A stretch of DNA of 55,228 nt, counting the filler, from Sluysia triapertura (Eukaryota), in the NCBI GenBank assembly GCA_046118255.1. It is 3 parts of 3 records of this genome, joined end to end, with 100 filler letters (N's around TTAATTAATTAA, not from the genome) between each part and the next. Parts side by side here need not be neighbours in the genome. Positions count along the whole stretch, not along the records: positions 19,360 to 43,552 come from JBJNIA010195155.1; 2 more parts are not named here. One strand, written 5' to 3'. Made by a program: the position numbers and the translations under genes. Every line of letters starts with the position of its first letter. Position 1 is the stretch's first letter. Of the stretch, positions 19,260 to 43,267 are shown piece by piece. The notes below the pieces were generated by a model. That model made no database searches and was not told the origin of the DNA. It saw only the letters and a program-made list of their open reading frames with translations.

Positions 19260-19360
19260 NNNNNNNNNNNNNNNNNNNNNNNNNNNNNNNNNNNNNNNNN
19301 NNNTTAATTAATTAANNNNNNNNNNNNNNNNNNNNNNNNNNNNNNNNNNNNNNNNNNNNT
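19260..19360. other. Artificial join: N44-TTAATTAATTAA-N45
   Basis: Six-frame-stop linker centred in Ns. Confidence 0.95.
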
Positions 19361-21846
19361 CAACTTTTATAATTAAATTCAAATTGTTTTTAATCTCCAC
19401 TGTCTCAAGCGCTACATTCTGCGGTATAGCATTAGGTCCAACTCTGCAATCACATCCTAAAAAATTTATAAGATAATAATAACACTTAGAGTAAGTAAAA
19501 AAATTTTACAGTATGTTTATTCTGGAAAAATTTCATCCTTGTAAAGTCGTGCACCATTTTGATGATTTGAAACTCGAAACTACATGAAACGGATCTCATT
19601 TTTGCGTACACTTTCTATAATTACAATCTAAATCAGGATCTTGATTGATAAATTTTGGACTTGTGATGATATTGACGACATAAGTGCATAAGCTCGAGTT
19701 GTATTTTGTGATCTGATTAAGCTCTTGATTCGTTCCTGTTTCAAACGAAGCTCGTAATATATGTTGATGACCACTTTTGTTACAATAATAACGAATCATA
19801 CACATATGAATCATTGCTACAAAATTGTTGAAATTATTAATGTCTGCAAATGCAAACATGACATTGGCCAAAGGAGTCGCAATTTTACTCATGATAAATA
19901 AACCATAGATAAAATTACTAAATGTTATGAAGTACTTCATACTATTTTCCAGAGAATTAAGCTTATCAAAATTAGCCGCGATTGATTTTATTCTTAAAGC
20001 ATATGATTAGTTTTAATGTCCACATTTTTAATTACACATAATGTAGGGTTCTAAAAATTTCCTCGTGCGTCTTTCAATAACGTAGCGTTCGGGTCTACAT
20101 TTTCACCTTTGTGGCTTATGACTTTGATATATTCAATAAATTGTTTAATTTGAACAAACGTTTTGTTAACTTGTATTATACGCATCTTAATAACTTGTGT
20201 TGGACTACGCAATCTATCTAGACATAGTACAGGAACATTTGTATCTCCTCGTTTTTATTCATTTGATATACGTTTTCTCAAATTAATATTTTGATTATTT
20301 GAAGGTTCCTTTTGAAGAATAAGATCCACATAATATAAAGCATTTTTGTAATCCTTTAACTTGAGTAAAACTTATAATCCCTGATTTCAATTTTATCCGA
20401 AGCTTTATTCGTTAAATCATCAAACAATTTTATAGCCAAATTTAAGCATTATTTATTTTTCGATCGACAGAGTATGAACACATAAAAATTACGTATCTTT
20501 ATCCACACAACCTGACTGTTTTTCTTTAGCATATTTATTTCTAACACTCATAATTTCTTGATTTTTTAAAATTTTGTTTTTTGTTGGTCATCCAATCAGG
20601 GCTTTAAAAAGAGACTAATGAGTAAAATCTGTCCTGATTGGATGATGGCCAGAAAATTATAACTGACATACAACGTGTGATTGCTAATGATTAACCATCA
20701 TCAATATTGAAGATTTTGACGAGCAGTGTCAATACTAATGATGGCAGCAACTCATTCAACTATTTTGGATTATAAAAATTTTATAATAATTAATTTAATA
20801 ATTGGTAATAATAACGATAATATTATTATTATTAACAAACATAAATAAAGAACTTTTACACGATCTTGTCTTCTTTATATCTTTATTTCTTCTGACATAT
20901 AAATTGAACGGAATAAGGACGATAACGGAGTACACTATGCTCGAATTATCGTCGTTATTTCGTTGTGTGACATTGAATTCTCTAAAACTGTAGTAATTTT
21001 CTTAAACTTCTTGAAGGATTTAAACATGTTGGAATGAATTTAAAATGTATTTTGGAATAAACTTCTGAGTAGTAATTGTTTCGAAAGAATTGATAGGCAT
21101 AATTCACCTGTGAAGATATAATAAATTATATGAGTCAAAAATGAAATAGAGAATGATAGAATAAGTTCTTAAATATTGATTGAAGTTTAAGATTGAAAAT
21201 AAGGTTTAAGTATTGAAATATCGTGGATAAAAAGGTTTATTGAAAAGATTGTAATTTAATGAATCTAAAAATGATTGCAATACAACTCATTGTATATTTA
21301 AGGTGTTATTATACTATGTTTTGCGTAATTAATTTGATGTTTTGGTGTTGTAGTTTTATGTTAATGAAGATTATGCATAGATGAATAGTGCGTTTGAAAC
21401 GTTGTAATTGATTCGAAGGTGTGAAATGGGTATTTTATGTGTTTCAAGTAGATTTATTGGTGTTGCGGAATGGTGTTAACTGTAATTGTGGTTTATATGT
21501 TGTAAGTTTAAACAAATGAACTATTGAATAAATATTATTAAATATTAAGTATTAATTGTTATAGTGTACTGTAAAATAAAGGGTTCGAAAGAATTGAATA
21601 GATTATTTCGAATTTGTTTGTTATTGGGTAACCGTGAAAGTCGCGTACATGTTTTTGGTGGGTTGGTTAATGTAAATTGGTAATGTTGGGTGTAACTGTG
21701 ATTTAGATGTTGTGGATTTGTGAATATAAATTGATTTTAAAGAGCATGTAATAGATGGATGTATAACTGTTGAGATGTAATGAAAAGAGAAGGAAAAGAT
21801 GCTGGTTTTTAATAAATTTTAGTGGTTGTCAAGGTTGGCCACTACA
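19361..21846 (-). mobile_element. Family A element with Fis1-derived cargo, cut off by an assembly gap
   Basis: Terminus TGTAGTGGCCAACC at 21846; same base skew, AAGATCGTGT motif and hairpin module as 23032-25804. Confidence 0.75.
20291..20551 (-). pseudogene. FIS1: Captured, decayed Fis1 (mitochondrial fission 1) TPR domain
   Basis: Over two frameshifts and two stops: RNKYAKEKQSGCVDKDT*FLCVHTL / RSKNK*CLNLAIKLFDDLTNKASDKIEIRDYKFY / KLKDYKNALYYVDLILQKEPSNNQ, colinear with Fis1 EKAAGSVSKSTQF...RSK...QRDYVFY...RLKEYEKALKYVRGLLQTEPQNNQ. Confidence 0.85.
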
Positions 21847-23031
21847 TAAGAACGTGTAAAATAAAATAAGATTAAAACAATAAAAAAGCGCTAATACGAG
21901 AAAATCATTTTTCACAAAACATCCTTTTTTAGTAATACCGAGCGAGCCTGTTTTTATCAATGCTGTCACTGCACAGAAATTCCAAATTACTCATATTATA
22001 ATAGTTATGTTAAACATCAAATATATTTTTGATTTATATACATTTATATTTTATTATTATTTAATAAAAGTTTCCTTTTCTTTTATATAAAACATTTCTT
22101 GTATCTGTATTGACTGATTACTTTGTATAAAAATTACAATTAACCAATCAAAACAATTTCAATTAATATTAAATGATATAATTTCATAATATCCTCTTTG
22201 GAAATAAGAGAAAGTTGAATTATAAAAATAATTATAAAAATGAATTTAAATAATTTTAAATCAAGATTTGGTTTAATCCAGAATTTGTATTTAAAGAAGC
22301 ACAAGTAAAATCATCAGTGAATCACTTAGTAAGACCAAATTTCTAATTAAGGAGTTTCTAATATTTTGGAGAAAATATTAGATTCTTCATAACAAATTTG
22401 ATTTTAATAAATTTGAAAGAATTAATACTAAAAATTATTAAATGTATAGATTTTATGTAAAATTTTATAAAATATTATATTATATAATATTATTATGTAA
22501 TATAACGATACCATCCAACTGAAACCATTAAACAAACAAATCAATAAAAGCGACTGAGAACAATTAGTAAACATAATCCACCAAATGAACGAAAATTTAC
22601 ACAAATACGTTCGGATTTCAAGCAACCTTCTCTGGAAAGTAATAAACTACCAGATAAAATCAACATTACACTAAAAACAAGTCAATCAACTCCCAACAAT
22701 ACAGGTACCGACCACAATAAATCAATTATAAACCCTGTAGTATCGATAGAAGGTACTTTATCGCATTTACAAGGTCATAAAGCAAGACCCTTAAGAACAC
22801 CGCATACTACTCTCCAAACAACCACCACGTCGAAACAACTCATCAGACATAATGAAACACACACACACCTCATTTAGACAAACCTTCACAAACGAAATGA
22901 AGACATCCAACTCAAATACATTCAACATATAACACTTTACCACCTATACCACCAATAAACTATCACACTCATATACAACTCGCAAATCCTTTTTAACAAA
23001 ATCAAACACATACAATAAAGTAGTAGGGTAC

Positions 23032-25804
23032 TGTGGTGGCCAACCCATTACTTTTAACAGATTTTATTACAAATTTTATTCTAAACATTTCAAGATCACA
23101 AACTTTCAAAATGTACAATATATATTTTAAAATTCATTAAGAAACATTTTTTACATAATCCCATGTCAACATAATCAAAACCATATGTTTCGATATCAAA
23201 CTCACTCTCAAAATCTACAGCTCACATTCCTAAATTCAAGCTTAATACTAACATAACTAAAGTCATATCCTTTTCAACATCACATAACCTTTTAGAAATC
23301 GTCAAAACCGTTTCTATATTTTATCTTTTTTCAGATCCATTAAAATCAATTTCCATTTATCAAAATAATTTAAATCCACTTTCTTATAAAATTCAAACCA
23401 CAATGATATTCAAAATCATTAATTTACATTAAAAAGTTCATCTTAAATATTTTATTAATCATTTCATAACAATCCAATTACAACCACATTCGAAATTAAC
23501 TACCAGACATCTTCAAATCAATTAAAACATTCTGACTTCATGATCTGTTATCATTTAATCCCTAACATTACAGAAAGACAATATTACTTAAAATTATCAA
23601 ATTATCAATAAGTCAAATTTTCAACATTATACAAGCATCTTTTCAACTTACCAAAACATAACCTACGATCTATCTTATTCACATCCACTAAACTATTCTT
23701 TTTCAACATATGCATAATTCACAGTCGTTTAATATCCAAACATTACCTTCGTTCAAAACACCAATGGACATTTATCATCCATTTTTAACATTTATATTAT
23801 TTCAAAATACTTAAGTGTAGACCCAAATACATCTTCAGTAAGAAATATTAAGTAGCATTTAAAAATTCACTTAAAATTAGTAAACAGCATTTAAAATTAT
23901 ATTAAAACGTTTTACGCTTTGTCTTATTAGAATCACACTACACAATAAAATTTCATTGTAAACACGTAACAATAGTTTGTAACACCATATGTTCATGAAA
24001 TCTTAACATTCAACCTCAGACAATTAACTTCTGTAAACTAAGAAATTGATTTTTAAATATGTTAAGAAATACTATCAAATTAAGAAAAGAAAGATCATGT
24101 TCTTTAAGTTTAAAAGATGTATGTAATTTATATTAAGATAATAATAACATTAAAATTATTATTATTATTTTTATAAAAATTATTTGGTAGCTGTCATCAT
24201 CAATAGTGATACTTTTAGTTCACATGTTTGGTTTAATGTCACTATTGATGATGGTTGTGACGACAGTTAATTATATTTAAATTCTGTCGAATAACAATTG
24301 ATTGGATACCCAATCACCTCGAGTGGCTAATCAAAAAATGCAATTTAAAAATGATTTTATGGATTTTATAAGATGTGTTAAATACGACAAAATGAGATTA
24401 TAAATGAATAACAAATATAAACATAATATTCATTCGCTTTTAGAAGCTAATATGGCGTTATGAACAAATGAGTTTAATATATTGTCTTTAGAAAGTAAAA
24501 AAATTGATCGAAGATATTGCAATAATCAAATATATTTTGGATGATTTACTTAATTCATTTAATTGTATCCGAGAAGATTTTCAATTCAAATGGCTAAAAT
24601 CAATAAAACTAGTAATGATAGTAGTCGTAAACGATGTAAATGCTTACGTATTAATATTTTGGAACAAAACCATCAAATTGTCATTTATAATGTTTGTTTG
24701 CAGTTTCTTTATCTTAGGCTCGATATTATTCACCAAAATTTAGAAGTGATTACTCGGCTGGACAGCAATGAATATATACTCATTATAAATAGACGTCAAG
24801 TTCGTGATTTCAAAACTATCATTACAAGTGTTAGTGACAAAACTAGACTATGCATTAACAACCATATAGAAATATTATCTCAATGTCATTTGATTTCAGA
24901 AATAAAAAGATCAAAAGAAAATACCTTTTACGAATTTATTATCCGAATTTCTACTGAATTAATCAAAATTAGTAAAGATAAATTTCCAATGAAAAAAGAT
25001 ATGACGATTTGTACTAACGAGAATGATCTAAATCAGAATTTTAAGCTCACGCCAATAGTTGTTAATATAATCTGATTAGTTAGAACCATATAAAAGAAAG
25101 TTAATGGTCATTGTGCAAGTTGAAGGAAATCATATATTACATATAAAATTAACTAGATGTTGGAATCACAACGTTAGAAATGACGAAAAATCTCAAGTCA
25201 TATGTTCCTTAATAAAAAAATTAACAAGTTCAAAACATTAATTCGAACGCAGCGACCATTCAATACAGAATCGCCAATGTCAATTGAAGAATATTCGATC
25301 AAATGTCATCTGCTGATCCATTCTATATTTCGATGACACTAGACAACAACTACTTATGAGTACAGACTCTGGCTTGATCAACTCTTGTTCAATCGAAATG
25401 ATTTATCTAATGTTGTTCTCTTTGGTGGTTCGAGACAGAATGGTTTTCAAGAACTTCTTTAAAGTAATTTTTAATTGTAATAACACTTATAACATATCTT
25501 TAACATTTACTTCTTTTTTTAGAGTGTTACAAAAACGAAATTCGAAACGTTTGGCGAAATCATTATTAAAAAAGAATTTTCAAAAATAAACATTAAATGT
25601 CTTGTTATTAGTAATAAAATGGTTGTTAATTTGGTCGTTTGCTTTGTTAATAATTATTTAAAGTTAAAGAATTTTCGATTTTCCAACAAACAGGTTGTAA
25701 TGAAGTAAATAAAAATGAAAGTTGTATAAGTTCTGATAGTGATAACTTAAAAATAAATCCTTTTTAATATTAATAAAACCTGTTAATATCCGATTACCAC
25801 AACA
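23032..25804 (+). mobile_element. Complete 2773-bp solo-LTR-like element (family A) with an internal decayed cargo gene
   Basis: Termini TGTGGTGG...CCACAACA (7/8 inverted match); GGTAC duplicated at 23027-23031 and 25805-25809. Confidence 0.8.
24470..25708 (+). pseudogene. Decayed cargo gene of the complete family A element, with a 59-nt intron at 25464-25522
   Basis: Same-strand ORF pieces at 24504, 24563 and 25356; a phase-0 splice joins ORF 25356 to a 61-codon frame ending TAA at 25708, followed by AATAAA. Confidence 0.55.
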
Positions 25805-26479
25805 GGTACGGTTTCGCCACCAGATCGACCCATTCTTTTAATCCGGAACGTCCAAGATTTTAAAATCGCAGGATACGCCCAGCTAGGAGCGTCGTCTCAG
25901 AATGGGTAACCACCGCAGTATAAATGGAAGCCCATGAAATATTAGTCCACCCCTAATAAAACTTATGCTCAAGTATGCAAAACGAGCATACTGAGTAGAT
26001 CTTTAAGTATCCTTGAATCGTAAGGTATCACTATACGACCCGAAAACGAAGAGGCAACAAAGTCAAATTAAAAAGCCAAGCATCCAAACCGACAGAAGGC
26101 AGCACCACAAGGTTGTACAGTATCAGCTCAGAAATAACCTAGTCGGTCAAAACAAATCAATATCTCGTAATAATGACGGATGCTTTAAGACTCTAATATG
26201 CCAGCTGATCATAGTCTAACAGGCCATCAGAAAGTTATTACTCGAACAAATCAGTACAAGTTCAATAAAAGCAAGAACGACCGAAAACCACGAAAAGAAA
26301 ATACAAGTCAGTAAATATCTCAACCTATAGATATGGCCAACAGCATCACTGTACCATAAATACCGGAACAGACAAATTTCAATCAACAAAACGGAACTAT
26401 AAATTACGCGGTTGACAAGTGTAATGATAGAATTACAGTACAAATCAAATGCACTACGAAGCAACGTTACCATTTGCCA

Positions 26480-27245
26480 ACGTTCCCCATAAAAATATTA
26501 GGCAATATCATAAAGCATGAACACGTATGGCTTTCCCATCAATCTAAAGCCCTGTGCGAACAACTCACAGCATATTCGACGGGGCTGTAATCCGACGTCG
26601 ACGGCGAGATCCCCATAACCCAACAGAAATCTCAGAAGGCAATTATCTTCGACATGCCCTTCTTCACAGATGAATCCGGACATGGTTCCTTGTCGTTGAA
26701 TCCCATTTTAAAATGACAAAGCACCATGTTTATCCAACTACTTCCTCTCCTACCGCAACTTCTCCTAAGTAAGCAATGTAGCCTGATACAAACTTGCCTA
26801 CAGTCGGAAAATGATTACGATGACCTGAAACAAACAATCTTGGCACATTACCGTCCCAAAACAGAAAAGGTATTCCAATATTATTTCAAAGCGCAATCTA
26901 TAGGGACTTTATCCCCTTCTGAATTCTTAGCCAAGATCAGGAACGATCTTGAGCCATTCGGTTGAGAAAAGGATGAGAACCATGGACGCCATGCCCACAG
27001 AAGTCCAGGCTGCCTTCACCGGGAGCTAAATAGATAATATCAAAGAACTGGCCAATGGCGTACAAGGCGTTCAGACACTATAAACGCTATTCAAGACACG
27101 TCACATTCAAAGTCAGGCATCACCTTGGAATCAGTATCAATGCGGATTTATGCCCTGACTGTACAAGTGGCAGAAATTACCAAATTGGTAGCCGCCGGTC
27201 TTACACAATATCCGAATAAACCCCCTGCAATACGCCAATCCTCAT
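26480..27245 (+). mobile_element. Decayed Ty3/Gypsy gag
   Basis: PFF..WFLVVESHF...LLP...YDDLKQTIL...IGTLSPSEFLAKIR follows the Gypsy gag pattern PFW..WF..VE..F...Y..LK..L...LG..PS..L; higher GC than flanks. Confidence 0.7.
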
Positions 27246-27433
27246 TGTGGTGACCAACCTTATAGCTTTAATAAAACATACCAAAATCTCACAAATGTAC
27301 AAAAATAAAATTTTACTTCTAAAAACACCTTAAGTCTATAAATTCATGACAAAGAATATTACCAACTCATAGCAAGAACTCCATCAATAATACTTACCCA
27401 AAACCTCACAACATCCAAATCACAATAATGCTG
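27246..27433 (+). mobile_element. Family A terminus fragment that truncates the Gypsy gag
   Basis: TGTGGTGACCAACC followed by C/A-rich sequence. Confidence 0.6.
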
Positions 27434-27660
27434 TGTTGAGGACGAAAAATTGTTTAATTTAAATAAATTTTATTTTTTTAAAAGTGTTTAACAATAAAAT
27501 TACAAATGTCAATCAAAAGCAAATTATTTAATTTTAATTTTGAAATTACAAAAGAAATAGGCTTAAGGCCTGTAACCATTAACAAATTTAAAATGATAAC
27601 AAAATATGTTTTAAAATCGAAATATAACAAATAAAGAAACAATATAAATAAAATTATTGA

Positions 27661-28309
27661 TTATCGTCGCGGTGCTGCAATTGACATTCCCCCTTTTATT
27701 TTTATACGAACAATTTTCTTAATAAGTTTTTCTGATAAAATGTCCTTATCTACGAAATTATTCATATAAACTAGTTTTGTACATTTTATCAAATATCCTC
27801 TTATTACACATTCGTATCGGTGAATAAAAGATTGAAAAAATATTAAATCCCCTTCCCTTACTGCTTGAAAAATATCGAAAGGGTTATCAACAATTAATTT
27901 TTCAACAAATACTAAAGGCATATTTAATTTTTTCGTAATATCGTCTATATTTACACACCACTTTTCTTTAAGCACATAGGTTATTTGTAATGATATCAAT
28001 CTGAGATAAGAGTCAATTAAAATATTATTTATTAATCGTAAATTATTGTCATGAAATAACATATTACTAACACATGATTCAATAGTCTTTAAATCAACTT
28101 CTACATTATTATATAACGCGATTAATGAAACTTTATGGTTTTGGAGTTCTAATTCTTCATAAATTTCTTCATAACTTTAACTTGTTACTAGATATCAAAA
28201 AACTCATTATATCAATGCAATTCCTTTCGCTTTATTTATCAATTGATGAAACTTCATGTGTTCTCTTAAAATCAGAGGCTAATACCTTAATTTCATTCCA
28301 AGTTGTCAT
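27661..28309 (-). pseudogene. UFL1: Captured, intronless, decayed N-terminal domain of E3 UFM1 ligase 1
   Basis: MTTWNEIKVLASDFKR...K*SERNCIDIMSFLI matches WEEIRRLAADFQR...RLSERNCIEIVNKLI; after a frameshifting deletion EEIYEEL...VDLKTIE...LIDSYL...IFFQSFIHRYECVIRG stays colinear with UFL1. Confidence 0.85.
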
Positions 28310-28450
28310 TTAACAAATAACCAAAAGCAACGTTTAGAAATTTTAATCAATATCATAATAATTATTCATCATTATCTGAGCAATAAATTTATACTAACAA
28401 CAGTTTTATACTAATTACAGTATTAAGTAAATAATTATCTTATATAATTA

Positions 28451-29400
28451 TTACTGCTTATCGACTAGTTTAGTTGTTACTATTTTCTCATGTGTCTCTA
28501 GTTCCAAACTACGACGTCCATTGGTTGTAAGTGGCTGCTGAGATGCATAAGAATTGTACATACCACAACTAACTGAATCAGTACGTGACAGATTATCTAC
28601 TGATATTATCGTTCTTTGGTTAGTACCAGGCATATTAAGACCTGATGATTTGAAAATGCAGCTTCAAACTCATAAACTTGACCCATCAAATCATCGACTT
28701 TACTAAATGCATTTTGTTTCAATCTTCGTTCTTCGTTCAGCTGCTTTTTAATGGGTTTACTTCCATAGTGGATTTGTCGGTAACGGTTTTGCGTGTTTTA
28801 TATTGTCTGAAAGAACTTTAGTCATATTGACAATTCTGCTGTTCTTTTCTGTAATTTCTGACACTAATTGTTCAATATGTATTTGTTTCACCAAAGCTAA
28901 TTGTTGTTCTGTTGCTGCTTTTCTTTCAGAAGCATGTTTCTTTTCATTTTCTCTTTCATTTCTTTGTCAAAAGTTTTCCGAAAATCATTCAATTCTTTAT
29001 CAGTTAAATAATGTTTCATAAGTTGTCATTCTTCGACCAATAATTGTACTTTTGATCTGATTTCATTTGTATAAACGTTACATTTTTTTATATAGATCAC
29101 GTTCAGAACAAATATCACCTAATGCTTTTTGAAAATTGCATTTCAAGTATGTGTGATGACAATTAAAGATTGATTTCATAGGACTCATCCTTTGACGAAT
29201 GTGAATATTTTCTTGTTGAAGTGATGTCAAACTTTTCGATAACTTCAAATTACTTTTTGTTTTGTGTGTATTTGGATTGGTTTTGGTATTTTCATGTTTA
29301 TTAGGTGATTTCAAAACACGATCTTTATCGTATTCTGCAAAAAATTTATTGTTACACAGTGATGGATCGAGATCAAATATATTGTATAGTATTATAAAAA
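28451..29400 (-). pseudogene. Frameshifted coiled-coil coding fragment of probable host origin
   Basis: Glu/Lys/Gln-rich helical pieces in alternating frames, e.g. KKQLNEERRLKQNAFSKVDDLMGQVYEFE. Confidence 0.45.
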
Positions 29401-30769
29401 ATTGAAGGAAACAGAAAAAAATAGAAAGGCAGATTGTTAATAAAAGAAATAATAATAATGATAACAATAACGTGATTATTATGTTTATTAATACTAAAAT
29501 GTTGATGTTGAAATTATAAAATTTATTATGAAAATTATTGTAAAAGTTATTATAAAAGTTATTACTTGATAATCATACTATATAACAATAATGACTATAA
29601 TTATTATATATATTTTAATACGATCTGAATTTTAATAATAATAGTGGTAGTTCATGATAATTAGGTACGATGATCATGTTTGTTTTTTGAATGAGTTTAT
29701 TAGTTTGTTTAATAGTCTGTGTATATGTGAAGTGTTTTATGTGATGAAATGTGATGAATTTTGTGTGATTTCCCTACACAAGTAAAGAACAAATAAGCTT
29801 AAAGAAAATTTGATAACCGTTAAACAGTTAACCGTTATAATTGTAAAGTAAAAATACTGACCCTAGTTAATTACATTGCTGAAAGATTTAGGATATACTT
29901 TCGTAGCATTTTATTTTCTTGTGAGTACGTCTTTCTCGTAATATAAATCGTATTGCACAGGCGGACCCGTGTAATTTAATAGTTTTATAATTGTTTCAGA
30001 CTTAGAAAAAGTTGAACATTAATAATTCAATTAACAATAATTAATAGTTGGATATAACTACATACGTATAGACATTCAAATTAAATAATAAGTAGTAATA
30101 TTAATTTTTTGTGAAGTATTCAAATATTAACATTACAAATATATAGAAGTTTTTCTGTTGGACTTGGTGAATATATAAGATGTAAATTAAACCATAAATA
30201 ATAAGAAAATAAAAAATGACTAATGATTATTTTGTATATATTGAATAATCTTTCCAATTTTCTTAAAAATTATATTCTCTCATTCAGATTACAAGATGCA
30301 ACTTCCAAGCGCAAAGATAATAAATTACATAAATCCTTCTTACAATGGCATTGACCGTTCCTGTGGTAATAATGCCACTCCCCTTGCACTTCTTAATTCA
30401 AAATCCATTCCAAATTACCTTAAATGCGAAATAAATAATCATTTCATCTCGCATTTATTTGACATAAATCAACTGCAACCGCCATTAGTATTCAACGTTT
30501 TAAAGGGTTATCTATTAGACAAAGGCGTTGTAGTAATAGCTGCTGCAAGAGGAACAGTTGCATACTAGATTGCAAGGATTCACATCACTATACATTAAGA
30601 ATCTAACCAGCAATTGCAAAATTCAAATAGTAGTGGAGAAATTATCCATTATATGTGCCATTGTTTTAGAAAAACACGACAAGTCACTCAATTTAGCTCT
30701 ATTTCCTTTATTATATGAGAATGACATGGGTAATATCTATAAGTGGCTAAAACCAAGCATTGCCTAACA

Positions 30770-31260
30770 TTAGAATCACACCTTAAACTTCCCAACACAC
30801 ACCTTCAAATCAATCCAAAACATTCCAATCTTTCAACATTCAGTCTCGAATATCACCGAAAAACACTAACTTAACACTTTAAACCATTTTAGACATTGCA
30901 ATTAAAATAACCTTATGTAAAGATATTAAGTTAAAAGATTTATGTAGAGAAAGAATGATAATTACATAAAAGAAAGATCGTGTTGTTATTATTCTTCTAA
31001 GATTTTATGCATTTATTTAATTATTATTATTATCATTCAACCATTTTATTAATATTATCTAGTCTTATTATTTGTATTATCATCAGAAACATTAGCAAAA
31101 TTAAACATACATCGTGGTGATTTATTTGTCACCATTTTAATTATCATTTAGTTCGTTACAAGCTTTATGGTGACAGGTATACATTAAAACAGCACCCAAT
31201 TAACAATTCATTAACACATTAATTCTGATTTGATTGGACATCCAAGCAGTCTCATTACTT
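30770..31260 (+). mobile_element. Family A spacer and hairpin module, cargo lost
   Basis: C/A-rich tract, AAAAGAAAGATCGTGT, stem TGTCACCAT/ATGGTGACA, GATTGGACATCCAA. Confidence 0.6.
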
Positions 31261-32444
31261 TTACAAATGTAAGCATAAATGTGTGGATGTCCAATAAAAA
31301 GTCAAGAAAAGAGATTCATTTATATATGCATGTGGTGTGCAAATAATCTCTATACTTAATAATAGTTTTATTATTGTCACACAATTTGGTCTGTCTAAAA
31401 TATATAGCGCCCTTTCACTCCAGTTTAAAAAAGAATTAAATGTTAGGGTTATTTCAACTAGTTCAACCATTTTCACCTCATGTTTAAGGAAGAAATAAAA
31501 TCATTTTATTTCATTCATTTTAAAAAACATTAATAAATTAATTATGCTTATCAGTGATTGAGCGTATAGTCAACTGTTCAAATTTTTGATCGTTATAAAT
31601 ATATTGCTAATAAGGTATAATAGTGACTTCCACATTCTTTAGCAAACTTAACATCATTCTTAAATCCTGTAAATAAAACATAAATCACAGGCGAACTCAC
31701 TTATTTTCTGATTTAATGGAAAATAATCCTATAGAATAACCGAATTTTAAATCGCAAAGCTCTATCTACAGCTGAACCAAAATCTGACAACTCTTTACAG
31801 TTAGATAGCCAATAATCTGTGGAAAAATGTTGAACTGTTTTGAATTTCTTTGCTAAGGCAAATTTACATAAATATAGGAAAGAAGCAACTATTATTAATA
31901 TGTAAGAGCATATGTAAATTTAATAGACAATCAAACTTTCATGGATACTGCTAAGAGGTATCCCCAAATGTGGAGCCGAAGAAATTAATTGTATGATGAT
32001 TAAGGTAATTTTAAAAATCGCAATTCCTATAAGAAAAATGACTCGTCGAGATTTGAAAAGAAAAAAATTCTGATTTTAAATATAGAAAATATTCTAATTA
32101 TAGAGGAAATAAATCAGCAAACTATATTAACCTTAGAGGATTCGGAAATAATTTTAGATAGGTAATATTTAAGCCCTTAAAGAAGGAATAATAATCATTT
32201 TCGAGATACTAATAATTTTGGTTACTGTTGAATTAGTTTAGTATGAATTACCTTTTCATGTTAGGAATTTCTTATCTCATTAACATTGAAAAATCTTTTT
32301 CAAATTTTGGTACAATTTTTAGAAAGTGAACAAAAAATTAACCTTACTCTTAAATTTCTTTAAAAATTAATTAATCGGAATTTGTGCTTTTAGAATTTAA
32401 AAACGAAAAATAATCGAAATATAAATTAACTCCTGATTTCTTAC

Positions 32445-32667
32445 CTGAAACACATTCATTAAAGCCAGTAGCACCAAACCTAATGCAATAGACAACATCT
32501 GAGTACCAGTACCAATAATTGCACAAAATAACAAACGACATTTAATTGGTGGCCGAAATACGTCATTGTGGACACTTTTCCAACCTTTTTCTTCTTGTTC
32601 TTCTTCTTCAGTCATTTCGGTAGAATTTGGCATTTGATTATAATGTGCAAAATCTCTCCGAAGAATT
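32445..32667 (-). CDS. TM9SF1: TM9SF1 coding exon 2; later exons not found in the window
   Basis: RILRRDFAHYN...GWKSVHNDVFRPP...LFCAIIGTGTQML; ends CAG|gtaag. Confidence 0.92.
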
Positions 32668-32706
32668 CTAATATTAACAATGTCAATAATTTATTAAAAA
32701 CCAAAC

Positions 32707-33446
32707 CTTCCCATTATAAACATTATAAATGTCAATAATATAAATACTAAAACTAAAGAATTTGTAATTGAAATCCAATGAATTTCCAAAATCCTGGGAA
32801 AGAAATTATTATTTAAAATCAATACATTTCGATGAGAAGCTTCTATATTAGTTGGAACCCAACTAATAGAATAAGTAAACGTAAAATTTAGAAAATTTTT
32901 ATTTCTTAATGGTATCAAATCAATCGGATTAGTTTGTGTTGTAAAAACACTTCCATATATGATATTATTATTATTATATTGAATCTGAATATTATGATGC
33001 GTGTAAAACAATGCTTTGTGAGAATGTGGCAATATCTTACTTTCCTCCAAATTTCCAATAAATCCACGAAGCGGTATATTTTCATCTAGAACAAACTCAA
33101 AATAATATAATTCTTCAATAGCATCAATTAATTTTTGAATGTCTTTTTCTTGCAAAACTAAATTACAAAGTAATTTGCGATTCACATTTTCTCGAAAACG
33201 TAATTCGTACAATGATTCTGCCAAACGATCACCATCAAGCACTTCACCAAGACTTAGTTGTTTAAATGCCACTTTTTCTGGTCGACAAACAGGCAGCGTG
33301 TAATAAAGATAAGTTTCATGCGGATTGTAATATGGGCCAACTTTATTTACATATAAAATAACTTTTTCATTTAGTTCATATTTTTTAGGATTAAATCTTT
33401 GACATGAATAGATTTGAAAGAAGATAATTAAAAAATAAAGATTCAT
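32707..33446 (-). CDS. TM9SF1: Transmembrane 9 superfamily member 1 (EMP70 family), coding exon 1
   Basis: Signal-peptide-like start, VILYVNKVGPYYNPHETY.YY.LPVC, SLGEVLDGDR, LEIHW.SI.NS; 39-nt GT-AG intron at 32668-32706. Confidence 0.93.
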
Positions 33447-34187
33447 AAATAAAATTCTATATATATTTTCAAAAATCACATTGATCCGTATATTTCAATA
33501 AATCTAAAAATGTAATCAGATTAATTTTAAAAAACTTCAAGTTTGTCAAATGAATTTTAATGAATTTTAAAATTCGCTTTAATAATTTAATTTAATAATT
33601 CTACAAAAATAATCTATCTCAATTATTTAACATTGAAATCTAAAATTTTGAAAAATATTACTGAAACAAAATAAATACAAGATTTAAACAAATTTAAATC
33701 AAAATTTTTAATTTGAGATGGACACTTTTTGAAGATGATACAAAAATAAAGTACAATTTTGAATCCATAATTAGTTACTACTTATTTATTTATAAAAATT
33801 TGGTAACTTGGTTGTGTTTGAATATCAACTTTATTTGTAGTTAACAGAAACTTATTCCAATTACGATAAAAATTAACATTAACTCATTTTACATCAAAAC
33901 CTATTTTACTTATTGTACAAGTTCAGCAAAATCAAGGTAATTATATCTTAAATAACCTTATTTAAAATTACTTTAATTAAAAGTAACCAATTAAAATGTA
34001 TTCAAACTTAAAGTTCTCTTATTTATAATGAACCTGTAACTTTCAATTTACTTTAATGAAGAGCATAATCAAGCATATTTATCGATTATTTAACAATTTC
34101 ATTCTTTTATTTCCTTATTTTATATTTCTTATTAAAAATAACAATAAAATTTTAATAAATATATTAATTTGTAAAACGCAAAGGGTA

Positions 34188-34490
34188 TTAGGCTCGTAAA
34201 TTTGCTACAGGATGCATGAGAATAGAAACTGGTTTAATAATAGGTAAGGGATGATCAGCAGATGCACATTCATCGGGTAGCGAAATACCAACAGAAATAT
34301 TAACTTTGGATGCATCAAACCATTCTCGACTACTGAAGCAGATTGTTGTATCCAGATAAGTTATGGATTTATCACGTTGATTTTGTGATTGTTGAAAATT
34401 ATCTTCACTTATACACGGTTTTGATCGACTCCAATGTGAAATAGGTGGATGCCATAAAATCACGCGGCCGTCTAAACACTTAGCTTTTAT
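34188..34490 (-). CDS. INTS4: INTS4-like terminal exon
   Basis: IKAKCLDGRVILWHP...LDTTICFSSREWFDASKVNI...LPIIKPVSILMHP resembles VQVLYPDGQAQMIHP...LITQVYLSHTAWTEACQVEV...IPFSKPVKVYIMP; 303 nt to TAA. Confidence 0.8.
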   Translation of the reverse strand: MKAKCLDGRVILWHPPISHWSRSKPCISEDNFQQSQNQRDKSITYLDTTICFSSREWFDASKVNISVGISLPDECASADHPLPIIKPVSILMHPVANLRA

Positions 34491-36647: not shown

Positions 36648-37550
36648 TGTGGTGACCAACCCAATATTTTAAAGTTTTATTCCAATAATACACAACAAAA
36701 TTACCATTCAGAACATTTCGTAATTCTTAATTTTCCCAAACATTTTTATGAAAGTACTCTCGAAAACATACACAGATGATCGATTGAGTCGAATTCTTAT
36801 AGATGAAGTTGATGGTGTTTGTCAAATGTTTCGTGACCTTAGATCAGATTATAAAAGTTTACATGTTCTTGAACAACAAATTTACGGCATGCTAGTGACG
36901 TGTTTAACCGAAACTGTGTCTGATAAAATCATTCGAGATGTAATGAAAATTTTGTTTATCAACTGAAACAGCTGTTCTTGGAGTCCACTACAACAGGCCA
37001 AATGTATTTCATGAAAAATATAAAACTGAATCTGATCCATATCAAAAATTCAATAAAATTTGTATATTCGGATCTATCTCTGATTATATAAATATTATCA
37101 ACAATAATGTTTACAAAATTAAACAAGATAATTCAAGTAGAAATCCTTGTATCAAAAAAATAACGTATCAGTATCCATATCAGTTAAATTAAGCCGGCTT
37201 ATGTCTAAAATTCGGCGTATATTGTCCTTATTTCCACGACATCTTCGAAGCAATATATCTTGGATCAACAAATCAATTCTTTTACGAACATTTGAGTCAT
37301 TTGAGGCTCTACAAAATTACACATCTGACCACAGATTCTGTAATGATCAATATTAAGCCTGATTGTTGCTTTAAAAATTTAGACGATTTTACTGATTTTT
37401 TATATTTGTATTTATATATAAAGGGAGAATCTAACACAGACATTCACAATGTGCCAGAACATGAGCTACGAAACCAAAATTTTAAAAAATTTAATAAACT
37501 TTAGTTTACGTTATACTTAGTTTATGTTACAATAAATATAGTTTTTTTAC
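36648..37550 (+). mobile_element. Internally deleted family A terminus followed by decayed ORF pieces (36748-37504)
   Basis: TGTGGTGACCAACC at 36648; three same-strand ORF fragments; AATAAA near 37530. Confidence 0.5.
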
Positions 37551-39148
37551 TTTGCATTTTTTAAGAAAAAATTAATAAAACAACAAAAATTAAGAACAAT
37601 GGTTGCTAACTTGATTTATAAAGACAATAAGTCAAATTTAATCCATGTAATTTTTAATAAAATAAACCACGTTATAAAGATAATGAAAATCACTTTAAAC
37701 CATAAACTCCTAAAGTAACTATAATAATAATAATAACTAGTATAAATTATAATTTCAGATTGAGTTGGTGTTTTTTGAGATGATAGAAGATCACATAAGT
37801 GAGATTATTGAAATGTGATATTGAAATTACATGATATAATATAAAAATTTTGTTAAAAATCTTTATGAAGGAAATATCACTGTCGGTTTTATTAAACTTT
37901 ATAAAGAAAACGATTAACCGGATCTAAATTGAACAATTTGAAAAATCAATCAATTCTCTTTTGAACGTCAATTCTTCAAATTCGCTCTTTTCTTATTAGG
38001 AATTAATGACACATGAATAAATAAGCTCATTTCTATTAAGATAAGCATTGATAATTTTGCTTCAAAATCCAGGTAAAATCATCGTTATTTAAAAAATCCA
38101 AGCATTGTATACAATTTATATTTATATATTGTAAACAATTAATAGTTTTTATCAAACATTTGTGTATAAAGAATATATCACTTTGATTTTTAATCTTCTT
38201 TTGTTAACAGAATAAAAGCTAAAGGTCAAAGAACGACGAGATAAGTTCAAGTTAAATTATAAAGAGGTAAACACAAACTATCATTAAAGTAATTTTAAAT
38301 TTAATTTTATTAAGTGTTTTTTGAGTTTTTTAATTTAACGTGCAAGTTAAACTCGTTAATTGCAGCAAGAAGTTAAGGACACTTTACTTAGTTTTTGACA
38401 ATTGACATCTTGTGAGTACGTTTTCCTTGAGATATAAAACGTGCATCACAAGCGAGCCCGAATAAGTTTTATAATTGTTCCAGTAATAGGATAAAATCTG
38501 AACATCTCGATTTACAAGTTAACAAGTCAGTATTGATTGAACATTTATGTGTTTTAAGTTTAAATTTTAAAATTTAATAAAATTAAAATAAAATATCTTA
38601 CTAAAAGTTTTGTAAAAGAATTTATTTGCAATTGCATACTAATAACATAGTTCTTGTGTGTTATAAATAAAGTGTCCTTGGATTTTTCAAGTTATTAACG
38701 TGCGGATAAAGAGGCGAGTACTGAATTAAGCCTCTATAATATATCACCTTTAAGTACTAAAGAGTAACAAAGAAAAATTTAGTTTTAAGTTAATAAAAGT
38801 TTAAGGTTTTAACTAATTTAAGTTAAAAAGGAAAAGAAGCACAACACAAACCAAAATAAAATAAAGATTAAATTTATTATTTAATAATAAAACTTTAAAA
38901 TATTTATTTATAATACCAATGATTCAATATCAGCATAAAAGTAAGTCTCTCTATATATAATTCCAAAAAAGAAAAGACTTGGTGTGAAATATGATTTAAT
39001 AATTACTTTAACATTATTGTTCTCGTTAACTATAGAAAAGGACAAAGAAATCATTACTAATTATTTTTAAACTTGCAGGAAATGCATTTGACTTTCAAGA
39101 TTTTATGAAAGGCTAAATGGCCGAAAAATGTTACGAAACGGTTAAATA

Positions 39149-39650
39149 TAATGGGTTTGGTGCATAAATTGGTGCGGTTTTTACAATTATGAAAAATGCA
39201 AACTGATCAAGAATAAAAACCATGCAAAAAATTCCAAATAACAAAATGAATTTATTAAATCATTAGAAAAAACAAATATCTGTCTATATCGGTGAGATAT
39301 TCTCCGTCACAATCGATCACTTCCTTCTGGCAGATTGTCAATCCCACGTTTGAAGAAACTTGGTGATTTTTGGTGGAAAAATTTTTCAATCCACGTTGTT
39401 ATTGCTTCTTCGTTTTCAAACGCAGCGTTTAAATGTTGATTAAAATAGAAAAGGAGCAGATCCCTTAAATGTTCATTTTTATCTACCTGACAATCCATTT
39501 TAATGATGGTAATTAAAGTGAAAGTTAGTCTAAAATGATTTAAATAGATAATTCAGCTGAATAAATATAACTCAAATCACGTAAAACAAGAAGTTGGTGT
39601 GTTTTCTTTGCAACAAATAAAACCGCACGAATTTATGCACCAACCTAATA
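39149..39650 (-). mobile_element. Non-autonomous mariner (about 500 bp) with both TIRs and flanking TA
   Basis: TIRs near 39151-39182 and 39619-39648; ORF 39307-39498 fuses the transposase N- and C-termini. Confidence 0.9.
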
Positions 39651-39733
39651 TCATTTCAAACGATTAAAAACGTCTTCAATAATGCATGTGAATTAGCACA
39701 TTTAAGAACTCATTATTAAGTAAAATCACTAAC

Positions 39734-41459: not shown

Positions 41460-42130
41460 TTATATTACACTCATATCTACTACGTAAGTATTCAAAAGCG
41501 CTTAAGGTAAATCATTCACCATAATATTTCTCAAACAGAAAGAACCTTGCCTTTTTCTTAATTATTTCATAATCTTCTAGTAATTTGATATTCTCTGGTA
41601 ACTGGTTGTATATTTTTGAGACATAAACGGATGCAACATATCACCTAGCTTGTTATCACTGTTGATTCTGTATAGATTATTGTCTCAATGAAATATTCAT
41701 CTTGGTTTCCAATTTTCGTACTACTTCTAAAAGACATCCAGGACTTTCGTAATGTAAGCATTTGTAAATTATTGTCATGATTTTGAATTATATTCTTGCT
41801 TTTATTGCAACCAATGTAATTCTTCTTCCAACTTGGAAAATTGGTCTTGCTGCTTGATTAATTATTAATTGTAATTTTTTCACTTTTTTATATGAAATTG
41901 AGTACAACAAACCATTGTTAAAATCTATGTTGCTAGTTATCAATGAATGAACAATACGTTTAGCCGTTTCCTTATTAATACGTTTTCGAATATGATATTT
42001 TATTTAATTGATATTTAGACTCTTTAATATTTTCTTTCATGTTCATTTTTGAATCCATATAAAAACCTATATTTCGTAATTTTTGCTTCGCATCTTGTGT
42101 CTTACCACTTATACTAGTGAATGTTTCATT
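41407..42130 (-). mobile_element. 3' end of an L2/CR1-group LINE with a trinucleotide-repeat tail
   Basis: IRKRINKETAKRIVHSLITSNIDFNNGLL...KLQLIINQAARPIF...IYNQLPENIK; ends at the 41407-41459 repeat. Confidence 0.8.
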
Positions 42131-42853
42131 TTTTTAAATACAGGAATCAATTGTTTATTATCACGGATGTTAACAATAACTTATTGTTAAAATAAATTAA
42201 GTTGTCGCTTACAAATAAATTGTCAGATACTGTTCTTATGGAATGGCAATATTGTCAAAAAGGTTTTACAAGGATTAACAGAAATCTTCATCTAACAGAA
42301 TCTACAGAACTTCTAAAGACATGAGAATGAATACTTCATTTAAATTAAACATTTGACAGATGTAGTTGTACTGATTTCTGATGAAGATAGTGATGCAATA
42401 TCTGAATTATTTGTTTTGAAGAAAAAATATGGAAAAATCGGATAAAACTGAATCAAATTTTGTTGAGAACAATGATGACAATACAATTATAAACGAATGC
42501 CAAGTTTGATATGTTCTCTATAATTATTTAATACAGTGATTTCAACTTTTTGTCAAGTCAATCTTATGAGACAATTTCAAGACCCACCAATTTGTGAAAC
42601 TATTGTAGTTAATGAAATTCTTAAAATTGCTTTGATTTTAGAGTCTGATAAATATGGTTTTGTTATTGACCACACATTTAAAATTGTCTTGTTTAGAAAG
42701 GCATTATTTTTGAAATTATTTTTGACACATGAAGATTCTAGAAAATATTTCAATTTGATCTTGCAATTTGATCTGTCAATAATGTATCATGATTTTGTAT
42801 TATTTAATCAAAAATTCAAGTTTTTTATTTTAATATATTAAAACTTGACTAAC

Positions 42854-43267
42854 CTTGTAAACAAGCCTTTGTGCTAATGCTAAATCCCTTAAATGCAATT
42901 TTGGTTGTACACAATATGCCAACAATCCAATGAGATCCTTCATCCAATAAGATCTGCCGACTTTCTCACTCCACAGTCGACACATTTGATCAAATTCAAC
43001 ACTGATTTGTTTTTGATATTTCAAACTTGCGCATTTCATTAAATCCATGAAATCATTACGAATATCAGGCGATAAAGGTACTTTACATGAATCACACAAT
43101 GACACAAATGACGACGAATCAAGTTTTTCGGATAAATGTTGTTGTTGCTGGATATTATAGCCATGACAATTGTAAACTTGAATAATATGATATACTTTTA
43201 GACAATTTGATTCAAAATTTTGTCTCATTGCAACTCGATTATCATCTATTTTATCAATCCGAGCTAC
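42854..43267 (-). CDS. INTS4: Integrator complex subunit 4-like exon (most 5' exon found)
   Basis: 414 nt, tttag/gttag bounded; ends LALAQRLVYK, splicing to MIYAYS (compare INTS4 ETYKMEFMYSGV). Confidence 0.75.

What the first reader, a model, noticed from the sequence alone, without database searches (positions are those of the whole stretch)
23027..25809. Family of about 2.8-kb LTR-like cassettes with a shared frame and exchangeable gene cargo
Seen: five termini of the form TGT(G/A)G(T/C)G(G/A)CCAAC (21846-, 23032+, 27246+, 36648+, 54259-). One copy is complete (2773 bp, TG...CA, GGTAC TSD) and another is about 2760 bp. In three copies the order is terminus, about 1 kb C/A-skewed spacer, AAGAT(C/T)(A/G)TGT motif, hairpins, coding cargo, small intron. 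Cargo is a Fis1 fusion, an unknown ORF, or a repeat+CCCH ORF. Known: TG...CA ends with a 5-bp TSD are typical of integrase-made insertions, and giant planarian Gypsy elements (Burro) have multi-kb LTRs and extra ORFs. Inference: the LTR itself works as a gene-capture and expression cassette that leaves a self-contained gene behind as a solo LTR.
Basis: partly seen in the sequence, partly recalled or inferred. Interest (0 to 1): 0.9.

Follow-up and report, generated by a model that had tools for sequence, protein, structure and literature searches.

The report
Solo LTR-like unit with variable half
One 2.8-kb insertion with the end marks of a retrovirus-like integrase (most simply a solo LTR) is real, and two more diverged copies share its first 1.3 kb but not its second half; that the second half is a working 'captured gene' is not shown.

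Summary
The unit 23032-25804 is 2,773 bp, starts TG, ends CA, has 7 of 8 inverted end bases and a unique 5-bp duplication, GGTAC.

Two further copies (21846 on the minus strand, and 30770-31260) share a 5' module of about 1.3 kb: a C/A-skewed stretch, a 22-nt block, the AAGATCRTGT motif and two inverted repeats, the second with paired ATTGG/CCAAT. These modules align above local-composition shuffles (z 6.2, 5.6, 2.8). The 3' halves do not (z 0.15-1.7).

The 3' half holds:
- in the complete copy, an orphan 170-codon ORF with coding-like statistics;
- in the minus-strand copy, a decayed Fis1-derived fragment.

The termini at 27246 and 36648 carry only 100-190 nt of the family. No second 3' end, no paired copy and no gag/pol domain was found in the piece. 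No outside copies could be fetched.

Best reading: a solo LTR plus LTR fragments of related large-LTR retroelements, with a conserved promoter-like 5' module and a family-specific 3' module. The 'gene-capture expression cassette' idea remains an untested inference. A link to Burro rests on LTR size alone.

The parts
23027..23031 (.). Left copy of the 5-bp target-site duplication GGTAC
   Evidence: Read; unique CA+GGTAC partner downstream
23032..25804 (+). Complete unit c1, 2,773 bp, TG...CA; most simply a solo LTR
   Evidence: Only 7 of the first 8 nt are inverted-complementary; no long TIR and no terminal direct repeats
23032..23044 (+). 5' terminus of c1 (13-nt shared motif)
23045..24085 (+). 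C/A-skewed stretch of c1, holding the shared 22-nt block at 23507-23528
   Evidence: GC skew -0.45 to -0.60; block found in 3 copies against 0.04 expected (the pattern was derived from these copies)
24086..24100 (+). AAGATCRTGT motif region of c1
24190..24267 (+). Inverted repeat 1 of c1 (about 20-bp stem)
   Evidence: -13.5 kcal/mol, z -4.3, 0 of 200 shuffles as good
24299..24316 (+). Inverted repeat 2 of c1: paired ATTGG/CCAAT boxes
   Evidence: z -2.5; the same motif pair is seen in the other two copies by reading
24563..25075 (+). Orphan ORF of 170 codons (first ATG at 24590, 161 aa) inside c1
   Evidence: This length is reached in 1% of Markov simulations and codon periodicity gives p 0.0025. 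No homologues, no Pfam family above cut-off, AF2 pLDDT 33
25464..25522 (+). Candidate 59-nt intron (GT..AG, phase 0) joining two short ORFs in c1
   Evidence: Reading with the ORF pieces; not tested against transcripts
25805..25809 (.). Right copy of the duplication GGTAC
19360..21846 (-). Copy cM, cut off by the piece's edge. Terminus 21834-21846; 22-nt block 21401-21422; motif 20858-20872; inverted repeats 20681-20750 and 20588-20645
   Evidence: its frame aligns to c1 with z 6.2
20258..20587 (-). Fis1-derived fragment in cM, same orientation as the copy, starting about 45 nt after inverted repeat 2. It is broken: two changes of frame (one could be a short intron) and premature stops. No membrane-anchor part was recognised
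   Evidence: Fis1_TPR_C E 5.9e-10; pieces
19599..20006 (-). 136-codon open stretch in cM with no known relatives
   Evidence: periodicity p 0.06, and a length of 136 or more in 6% of simulations
27246..27433 (+). c2a: terminus plus about 190 nt of C/A-rich sequence only
   Evidence: beyond the terminus the alignment is not above shuffles
30770..31260 (+). c2b: frame fragment without a terminus. 22-nt block 30799-30820; motif 30969-30983; inverted repeat 31127-31175; ATTGG/CCAA pair about 31232-31247
   Evidence: aligns to c1 with z 5.6
27434..30769 (.). 3.3-kb block between c2a and c2b; starts TG, ends CA; no duplication seen. May be a nested insertion
   Evidence: Reading; junction comparison; unresolved
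27664..28309 (-). UFL1-like N-terminal fragment (about residues 4-215 of relatives of about 775 aa) inside that block, on the opposite strand to c2a. It is broken: one in-frame stop, one frameshift, and truncated
   Evidence: E3_UFM1_ligase E 5.6e-20, piece E 0.044, tblastn; best relative only 33% identical
36648..36745 (+). c4: terminus plus about 100 nt only; the frame is not shared
22548..23026 (+). Left part of the sequence into which c1 inserted (C/A-rich)
25810..27245 (+). Right part of the insertion target: 40% GC block with no protein match

Best explanation
The 2,773-bp unit at 23032-25804 is an insertion made by a retroviral-type integrase. It is most simply a solo long terminal repeat left after LTR-LTR recombination of a large-LTR retroelement. 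The copy at 21846 (minus strand) and the fragment at 30770-31260 are LTRs or LTR pieces of related but distinct families.

All three share a U3-like 5' module of about 1.3 kb:
- the integrase-recognised end;
- a C/A-rich stretch;
- a 22-nt block and the AAGATCRTGT motif;
- two inverted repeats, the second made of paired CCAAT boxes, read here as enhancer/promoter.

After this module the sequences are unrelated. This 3' module (R-U5-like leader) is family-specific and can hold ORFs. One is an orphan ORF that looks coding. One is derived from host Fis1 and now decayed.

Shown: the ends, the duplication, the shared module, the unrelated halves, the Fis1 origin and the coding-like statistics. Inferred: the LTR identity, the promoter function, transcription of the 3' module, and that the Fis1 fragment lies inside the copy's bounds.
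For: - Termini occur 4 times against 0.05 expected.
- The 5-bp duplication is unique and the ends are TG..CA with 7 of 8 inverted bases.
- There is no long TIR and no terminal direct repeat, so the ends are LTR-like rather than TIR-like or TRIM-like.
- The frames align above local-composition shuffles (z 6.2, 5.6, 2.8), while the 3' halves do not (z 0.15-1.7).
- The blocks are colinear and the hairpins are real.
- The break between frame and 3' half falls right after inverted repeat 2 in all three copies, which random truncation would not give.
- The ORF of 170 codons is rare by chance (1% of simulations) and periodic (p 0.0025).
- Fis1_TPR_C matches at E 5.9e-10.
- LTRs of about 2.5-3 kb, accessory ORFs and host-derived domains are described for giant planarian Gypsy elements (PMC6431247).
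- Gene-fragment capture by LTR retrotransposons is documented in maize (PMC2774510).
Against: - No paired copy, PBS, PPT or gag/pol/RT/IN domain was found in 24 kb.
- There is only one 3' end against four 5' ends.
- With composition-bias correction the frame similarity is marginal (nhmmer E 0.05-0.75).
- The shared-block patterns were derived from the same copies that they find.
- The minus-strand copy is cut by the piece's edge, so its 3' bound is unknown.
- The organism is not identified (best TM9SF1 relatives are 52-53% identical, from spiralians), so the planarian/Burro context is unproven.
- No outside copies were available.
Confidence: 0.5

Rival explanations
1. Truncation, not cargo. 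Only c1 is a whole LTR. The other copies are 5' LTR stumps abutting unrelated DNA (pseudogene debris, other repeats inside a long TE-filled intron or intergenic stretch). On this reading the 'exchangeable cargo' is just flanking sequence.
For: - c2a and c4 are plainly stumps of 100-190 nt.
- No second 3' end was found.
- The region is littered with partial genes: TM9SF1 N-terminal part only, a UFL1 N-terminal fragment and an INTS4 C-terminal domain.
- The Fis1-like and UFL1-like sequences are decayed.
Against: - In cM and c2b the similarity to c1 ends at the same landmark (just after inverted repeat 2), which is unlikely for independent truncations.
- The Fis1-like start codon sits about 45 nt after that landmark, in the same orientation.
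- c1 shows that a coding-like ORF does lie inside the bounded unit.
Confidence: 0.25
2. A non-autonomous cut-and-paste DNA transposon moved by an integrase-related transposase (Ginger-like), which has picked up gene fragments the way Pack-type elements do.
For: - TG..CA ends and a short duplication also fit Ginger-type elements.
- GingerRoot often carries gene fragments (PMC6839031).
- No retroelement protein domain lies nearby.
Against: - The paper gives 4-bp (Ginger1) or 6-bp (Ginger2, GingerRoot) duplications and 100-150-bp TIRs for GingerRoot.
- Here the duplication is 5 bp and only 7 of 8 end bases are inverted.
- No transposase remnant was found.
Confidence: 0.1
3. Seen from the other strand, these are retroposon copies that share a 3' end and are cut short at the 5' end to different degrees (LINE-type target-primed insertion). 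The short stumps would be ordinary 5'-truncated copies.
For: - One kind of end is in excess, four to one.
- The extents are graded: about 100, 190, more than 1,270 and 2,773 nt.
- The shared end read on the other strand looks like a tRNA-type ...CCA end (reading only).
Against: - Longer copies should then share everything the shorter ones have and more, yet c1 and cM are unrelated beyond 1.3 kb.
- No poly(A) or simple-repeat tail is present.
- c1 has a 5-bp duplication with TG..CA and inverted ends.
- No tRNA-like fold was found.
Confidence: 0.07
4. Chance resemblance in low-complexity AT-rich DNA: there is no family.
For: nhmmer with bias correction gives only marginal E-values for the frames.
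Against: all exceed their shuffles; the motifs are colinear, in one orientation and at similar distances in c1 and cM.
Confidence: 0.03

Closest known systems
Burro / GYPSM1 giant Gypsy-like LTR retroelements of planarians
   Same: Large LTRs: an internal part of up to 25 kb and a total of over 30 kb imply LTRs of about 2.5-3 kb. They have accessory ORFs upstream of gag, host-derived domains tied to apoptosis and ubiquitin-like pathways, and thousands of copies in an AT-rich genome (PMC6431247; PMC11410931). Fis1 and UFL1 fragments would fit that theme.
   Different: No sequence comparison was possible. No gag/pol is in the piece. The organism is not identified. ORFs inside the LTR itself are not described in the text I read.
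LTR-borne ORF of mouse mammary tumour virus (sag in U3); from my own knowledge, not tested
   Same: A protein-coding ORF lying wholly inside an LTR and therefore present in a solo LTR.
   Different: There the ORF is one fixed viral gene in U3. Here the ORF-bearing half differs between copies, lies after the promoter-like module, and has no known relatives.
Gene-fragment capture by plant LTR retrotransposons (maize: 425 intact elements, at least 189 captures)
   Same: Host gene fragments inside TG/CA, duplication-flanked LTR elements (PMC2774510).
   Different: The paper as read does not place the captured fragments in the LTRs. Here the candidate cargo lies inside the LTR-like unit itself.
Ginger / GingerRoot integrase-related DNA transposons and Pack-type elements
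   Same: TG..CA ends, a short duplication, frequent gene fragments, and a conserved frame with variable content (PMC6839031).
   Different: 5-bp duplication, not 4 or 6; no long TIR; no transposase.
Ogre elements and LARD/TRIM non-autonomous LTR elements (Ogre from PMC6431247; the rest from my own knowledge)
   Same: Very long LTRs (Ogre 1.9-6.5 kb), extra ORFs of unknown function, and non-coding derivatives.
   Different: These are plant families. c1 has no internal terminal direct repeats, so it is not a TRIM/LARD-type whole element.

Membership tests
LTR of an LTR retrotransposon (solo LTR) | 5'-TG...CA-3' with short inverted end bases | tested here: met
   c1: TG..CA, 7 of the first 8 nt inverted-complementary
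LTR of an LTR retrotransposon (solo LTR) | 4-6-bp target-site duplication directly flanking the unit | tested here: met
   GGTAC on both sides; the only CA+GGTAC downstream; 0 of 100 shuffles
LTR of an LTR retrotransposon (solo LTR) | The same unit occurs as a direct pair flanking PBS, gag-pol and PPT somewhere in the genome | not testable with these tools
LTR of an LTR retrotransposon (solo LTR) | U3-R-U5 layout with promoter and poly(A) signal | tested here: inconclusive
   Paired CCAAT boxes, TATA-like and AATAAA words were seen by reading only; these words are common in 27% GC DNA
LTR of an LTR retrotransposon (solo LTR) | Repeated in the genome with equal numbers of both ends | tested here: inconclusive
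   Four 5' ends but one 3' end in the piece
Burro / giant planarian Gypsy | Sequence identity of the LTR, or Gypsy-type RT/IN in the internal part | not testable with these tools
   No reference sequence is reachable and no internal part is in the piece. Only the LTR size fits
Burro / giant planarian Gypsy | Host is a dugesiid planarian | tested here: inconclusive
   27% GC. TM9SF1 best hits are 52-53% identical and come from annelid, brachiopod and molluscs. No near-identical protein is in the collection
Ginger / GingerRoot DNA transposons | 4- or 6-bp duplication; TIRs (100-150 bp in GingerRoot) | tested here: not met
   5-bp duplication; ends inverted over 8 nt only; 5' against reverse-complemented 3' alignment not above shuffles (criteria)
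TRIM / LARD whole element | Short or long direct terminal repeats within the duplication-bounded unit | tested here: not met
   No direct repeat between the first and last 300 nt of c1; none
Penelope-like elements (intron- and ribozyme-bearing terminal repeats) | Hammerhead ribozyme in the repeat | tested here: not met
   No Rfam hit at E of 1 or less other than a weak hairpin match
LTR-borne gene (sag-like arrangement) | A complete ORF inside the bounds of the LTR | tested here: met
   ORF 24563-25075 inside 23032-25804
LTR-borne gene (sag-like arrangement) | The ORF is transcribed and translated | not testable with these tools
   No transcript data. The exact ORF and relatives are absent from the protein collections

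The most novel reading that the evidence does not exclude
The LTRs of a group of giant retroelements are modular. A conserved 1.3-kb promoter module is followed by a swappable module that has repeatedly taken up different host-derived or new ORFs (Fis1-like, orphan ORF). Because the module sits inside the LTR, it is doubled in every provirus and survives as a promoter-plus-ORF mini-gene in each solo LTR.
Probability: 0.15. Interest if true: 0.75.

Novelty: new member of a known kind. Interest (0 to 1): 0.35.

Why it matters
If the 3' halves really are swappable ORF modules inside LTRs, every solo LTR would seed a promoter-linked open reading frame. That would be a ready route to new genes, and to decoys of host pathways (mitochondrial fission and apoptosis, UFMylation), in a genome already known for giant domain-collecting retroelements.

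As the evidence stands, the piece shows an ordinary-looking solo LTR with an unusual orphan ORF, plus diverged LTR debris among gene fragments. That is useful for repeat annotation and for judging gene models in this region, but it is not yet a new mechanism.

Tried and rejected
**Searches that gave nothing**
- Outside copies: exact look-ups of 11 window ORFs and homologue searches with the 170-codon ORF and the gag-looking piece.
- Structure route: AF2 on the 161-aa ORF gave pLDDT 33, so no fold search was run.
- PDB sequence searches of six pieces gave nothing usable.
- gag reading of 26717-26962: this was my impression only. There were no Pfam hits and no homologues, so it was dropped.
- Protein-level likeness between the 3' halves: none.
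- ncRNA or tRNA in the frame: none.

**Readings considered and dropped**
- Primer-binding-site reading of the terminus (bases 3-14 complement a ...CCA end). Rejected as the boundary, because the upstream flanks are unrelated in all four copies and the duplication puts the first base at TG.
- 27246 and 36648 as the two LTRs of one element. Rejected: nothing is shared beyond 16 nt.
- A 6-bp repeat, CCTCAT, that would bound 27246-31475. About 10% by chance (my own rough composition-based estimate, not a tool result), a different length from c1's duplication, and the ends are not inverted, so it is treated as chance.
- The UFL1-like fragment as part of a giant polyprotein. The best relatives are ordinary UFL1 proteins of 550-870 aa.

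**Papers and tool output**
- The Grohme 2018 paper could not be read.

- In my thinking I worked out where the breaks in the Fis1-like and UFL1-like fragments lie. Only counts are reported.
- I wrote two short degenerate search patterns (22 and 15 nt) from the three copies. They are motif patterns, not element sequences.
Full report
**Setting.** The piece (19360-43552) is 24 kb of about 27% GC animal DNA. It holds several partial genes:
- two exons of a TM9SF1-type gene on the minus strand (EMP70, E 5.9e-40 and 3.9e-22);
- the C-terminal domain of an Integrator subunit 4 homologue;
- a UFL1-like N-terminal fragment;
- a Fis1-like fragment.

The TM9SF1 part covers only about the first 330 residues of its relatives. 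Nothing further was found in the 13 kb downstream. Its best relatives are 52-53% identical and come from an annelid, a brachiopod and molluscs. No near-identical protein is in the collections, and none of eleven exact ORFs is on record. The source is therefore an AT-rich, probably spiralian animal. 'Planarian' fits the base composition reported for Schmidtea (over 70% A/T, PMC11410931) but is not proven.

**The observation.**
- GGTAC, then TG at 23032;
- CA at 25804, then GGTAC;
- length 2,773 bp.

CA followed by GGTAC occurs only once downstream of the 5' end. CAGGTAC is expected 0.58 times on both strands of the whole piece. The 3' end plus duplication was not matched in any of 100 shuffles. 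Seven of the first eight bases are inverted-complementary between the ends. Beyond that there is no terminal inverted repeat, and the unit has no terminal direct repeats. This is the signature of an integrase-made insertion with LTR-type ends.

**The family.** Self-comparison shows only weak similarity (62-67% over short stretches). The similarity is colinear between three copies: the complete copy (c1), the minus-strand copy that starts at 21846 (cM), and a fragment at 30770-31260 (c2b). The three share, in one order and orientation:
- a 22-nt block;
- the AAGATCRTGT motif;
- a long inverted repeat (c1 z -4.3; weaker in cM at z -1.8; not significant in c2b at z -0.8);
- a second inverted repeat made of paired ATTGG/CCAAT words.

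c1 and cM also share the terminus and a C/A-skewed stretch of about 1 kb. In global alignments against shuffles that keep local composition, the frames score z 6.2 (c1 vs cM), 5.6 (c1 vs c2b) and 2.8 (cM vs c2b). The sequences after the frame score z 1.7, 0.15 and 1.25. tblastn finds no protein-level likeness between them.

nhmmer, which corrects for composition bias, rates the frame matches as only marginal (E 0.05-0.75). The copies are therefore old, or belong to different families. The family is defined by landmarks rather than by alignable sequence.

The termini at 27246 and 36648 are followed by only about 190 and 100 nt of C/A-rich sequence. Beyond the first 14-16 nt they do not align above shuffles. 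c2a (27246-27433) and c2b may be one copy split by a 3.3-kb block (27434-30769) that starts TG and ends CA. I found no duplication round that block, so this stays open.

**The 3' halves.**
- *In c1*, the half after the frame holds a 170-codon open stretch (first ATG at 24590).
  - A stretch that long turned up in 1% of Markov simulations of the piece. Its codon-position composition is as periodic as that of the TM9SF1 exon (p 0.0025 against stop-free simulated ORFs).
  - It has no relatives in 5.8 billion proteins or in the PDB, and no Pfam family above cut-off. A single-sequence model is unusable (pLDDT 33).
  - A 59-nt GT..AG stretch further on would join two short ORFs in phase. The upstream one shows no coding periodicity and the downstream one only weak periodicity.
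- *In cM*, a Fis1-like sequence starts about 45 nt after the second inverted repeat, in the same orientation (Fis1_TPR_C, E 5.9e-10). It is broken by two changes of frame, one of which could be a short intron, and by premature stops. A 136-codon open stretch of unknown kind follows. The copy is cut by the edge of the piece before a unit of c1's length would end.
- *After c2b* there is no ORF of note.
- *The UFL1-like fragment* lies on the opposite strand, inside the block that separates c2a from c2b. It has one in-frame stop and one frameshift, and it covers only about residues 4-215 of relatives of about 775 aa. Its best relative in 1.84 billion representatives is 33% identical.
- *The CCCH call* after 36648 is weak (E 0.42).

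**What it most likely is.** No piece of 50 or more codons that I tested hits a gag, protease, RT, RNase H or integrase family. There is no pair of units. On ends and duplication alone, c1 is most simply a solo LTR. The shared 1.3-kb module would be U3 with its enhancer and promoter, and the variable half would be an R-U5-type leader that differs between families.

In all three copies the similarity stops at the same landmark. That argues for a real module boundary rather than random truncation.

A review of giant transposons describes planarian Burro elements with an internal part of up to 25 kb and a total of over 30 kb. That implies LTRs of a size like c1. It also describes accessory ORFs and host-derived domains tied to apoptosis and ubiquitin-like pathways (PMC6431247). 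A Fis1-derived fragment fits that theme, but this is a resemblance, not a test. Capture of gene fragments by LTR retrotransposons is well documented in maize (PMC2774510).

**Rivals.**
- *The 'cargo' is just flanking debris next to LTR stumps (0.25).* This is favoured by the two obvious stumps and the many partial genes. It is disfavoured by the common boundary and by the bounded ORF in c1.
- *A Ginger-type DNA transposon (0.1).* It fails on duplication length and TIRs as given in PMC6839031.
- *A retroposon read from the other strand (0.07).* It explains the excess of one end, but not why c1 and cM are unrelated beyond 1.3 kb.
- *Chance (0.03).* It is disfavoured.

**What was not done.** No outside copies could be obtained through the protein routes. 

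**Verdict.** The complete unit, and a diverged family with a shared 5' module, are real. Unrelated 3' halves are real, and one is host-derived. 'Gene-capture and expression cassette' is an attractive inference that this piece cannot test. Interest is moderate to low as it stands, and high only if a census shows discrete ORF classes behind one frame.

Noticed in passing
29791-30088 and 38287-38580: A second repeat family. The two blocks are about 63% identical (nhmmer E 2.5e-8), with a tight core of about 115 nt. In the second copy the core folds as a hairpin round a TATA-like loop (z -3.5). No Rfam match.
   Followed up: partly
39125-39676: A unit of about 550 bp bounded by 57-nt inverted repeats (78%), with an 81-codon open stretch on the minus strand. 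It looks like a deleted cut-and-paste transposon. Pfam gives nothing above cut-off.
   Followed up: partly
41648-42133 (minus): Three adjoining open pieces that, to my eye, resemble the tail of a non-LTR retrotransposon ORF. Pfam gives no match above its cut-off, only a weak DUF3091 hit at E 0.046.
   Followed up: partly
32400-33494 (minus): The TM9SF1-type gene is present only to about residue 330 of its relatives. Nothing further lies in the 13 kb downstream. Either a very long repeat-filled intron holds all the LTR-like copies, or the gene is truncated.
   Followed up: partly
34191-34490 (minus): An intact 100-codon ORF matching the C-terminal Ig-like domain of Integrator subunit 4 (E 1.9e-6), ending about 700 bp upstream of the TM9SF1 start. 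Upstream exons were not identified.
   Followed up: partly
23034-23045, 27248-27259, 36650-36661: Bases 3-14 of the shared terminus are the exact complement of a tRNA-type 3' end finishing in CCA, that is, primer-binding-site-like. The upstream flanks are unrelated, so the boundary stays at TG. The meaning is unknown.
   Followed up: no
25810-27245: The DNA into which c1 inserted continues as a 40% GC block, far above the 27% background. It contains a TATA-like word and several 70-90-codon open pieces, but has no Pfam or homologue match.
   Followed up: partly
22702-22708: A second CAGGTAC, 325 bp upstream of c1, preceded by bases loosely like c1's 3' end. Probably chance: 0.58 are expected.
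   Followed up: no
42833-43267 (minus): A 145-codon open stretch with a faint likeness to the N-terminus of the ribosome export factor NMD3 (E 0.44). No Pfam hit.
   Followed up: no
20571-20660: Rfam's only match (MIR827, 31 bits against a gathering score of 65) is simply the second inverted repeat of the minus-strand copy. It is not a microRNA call.
   Followed up: yes
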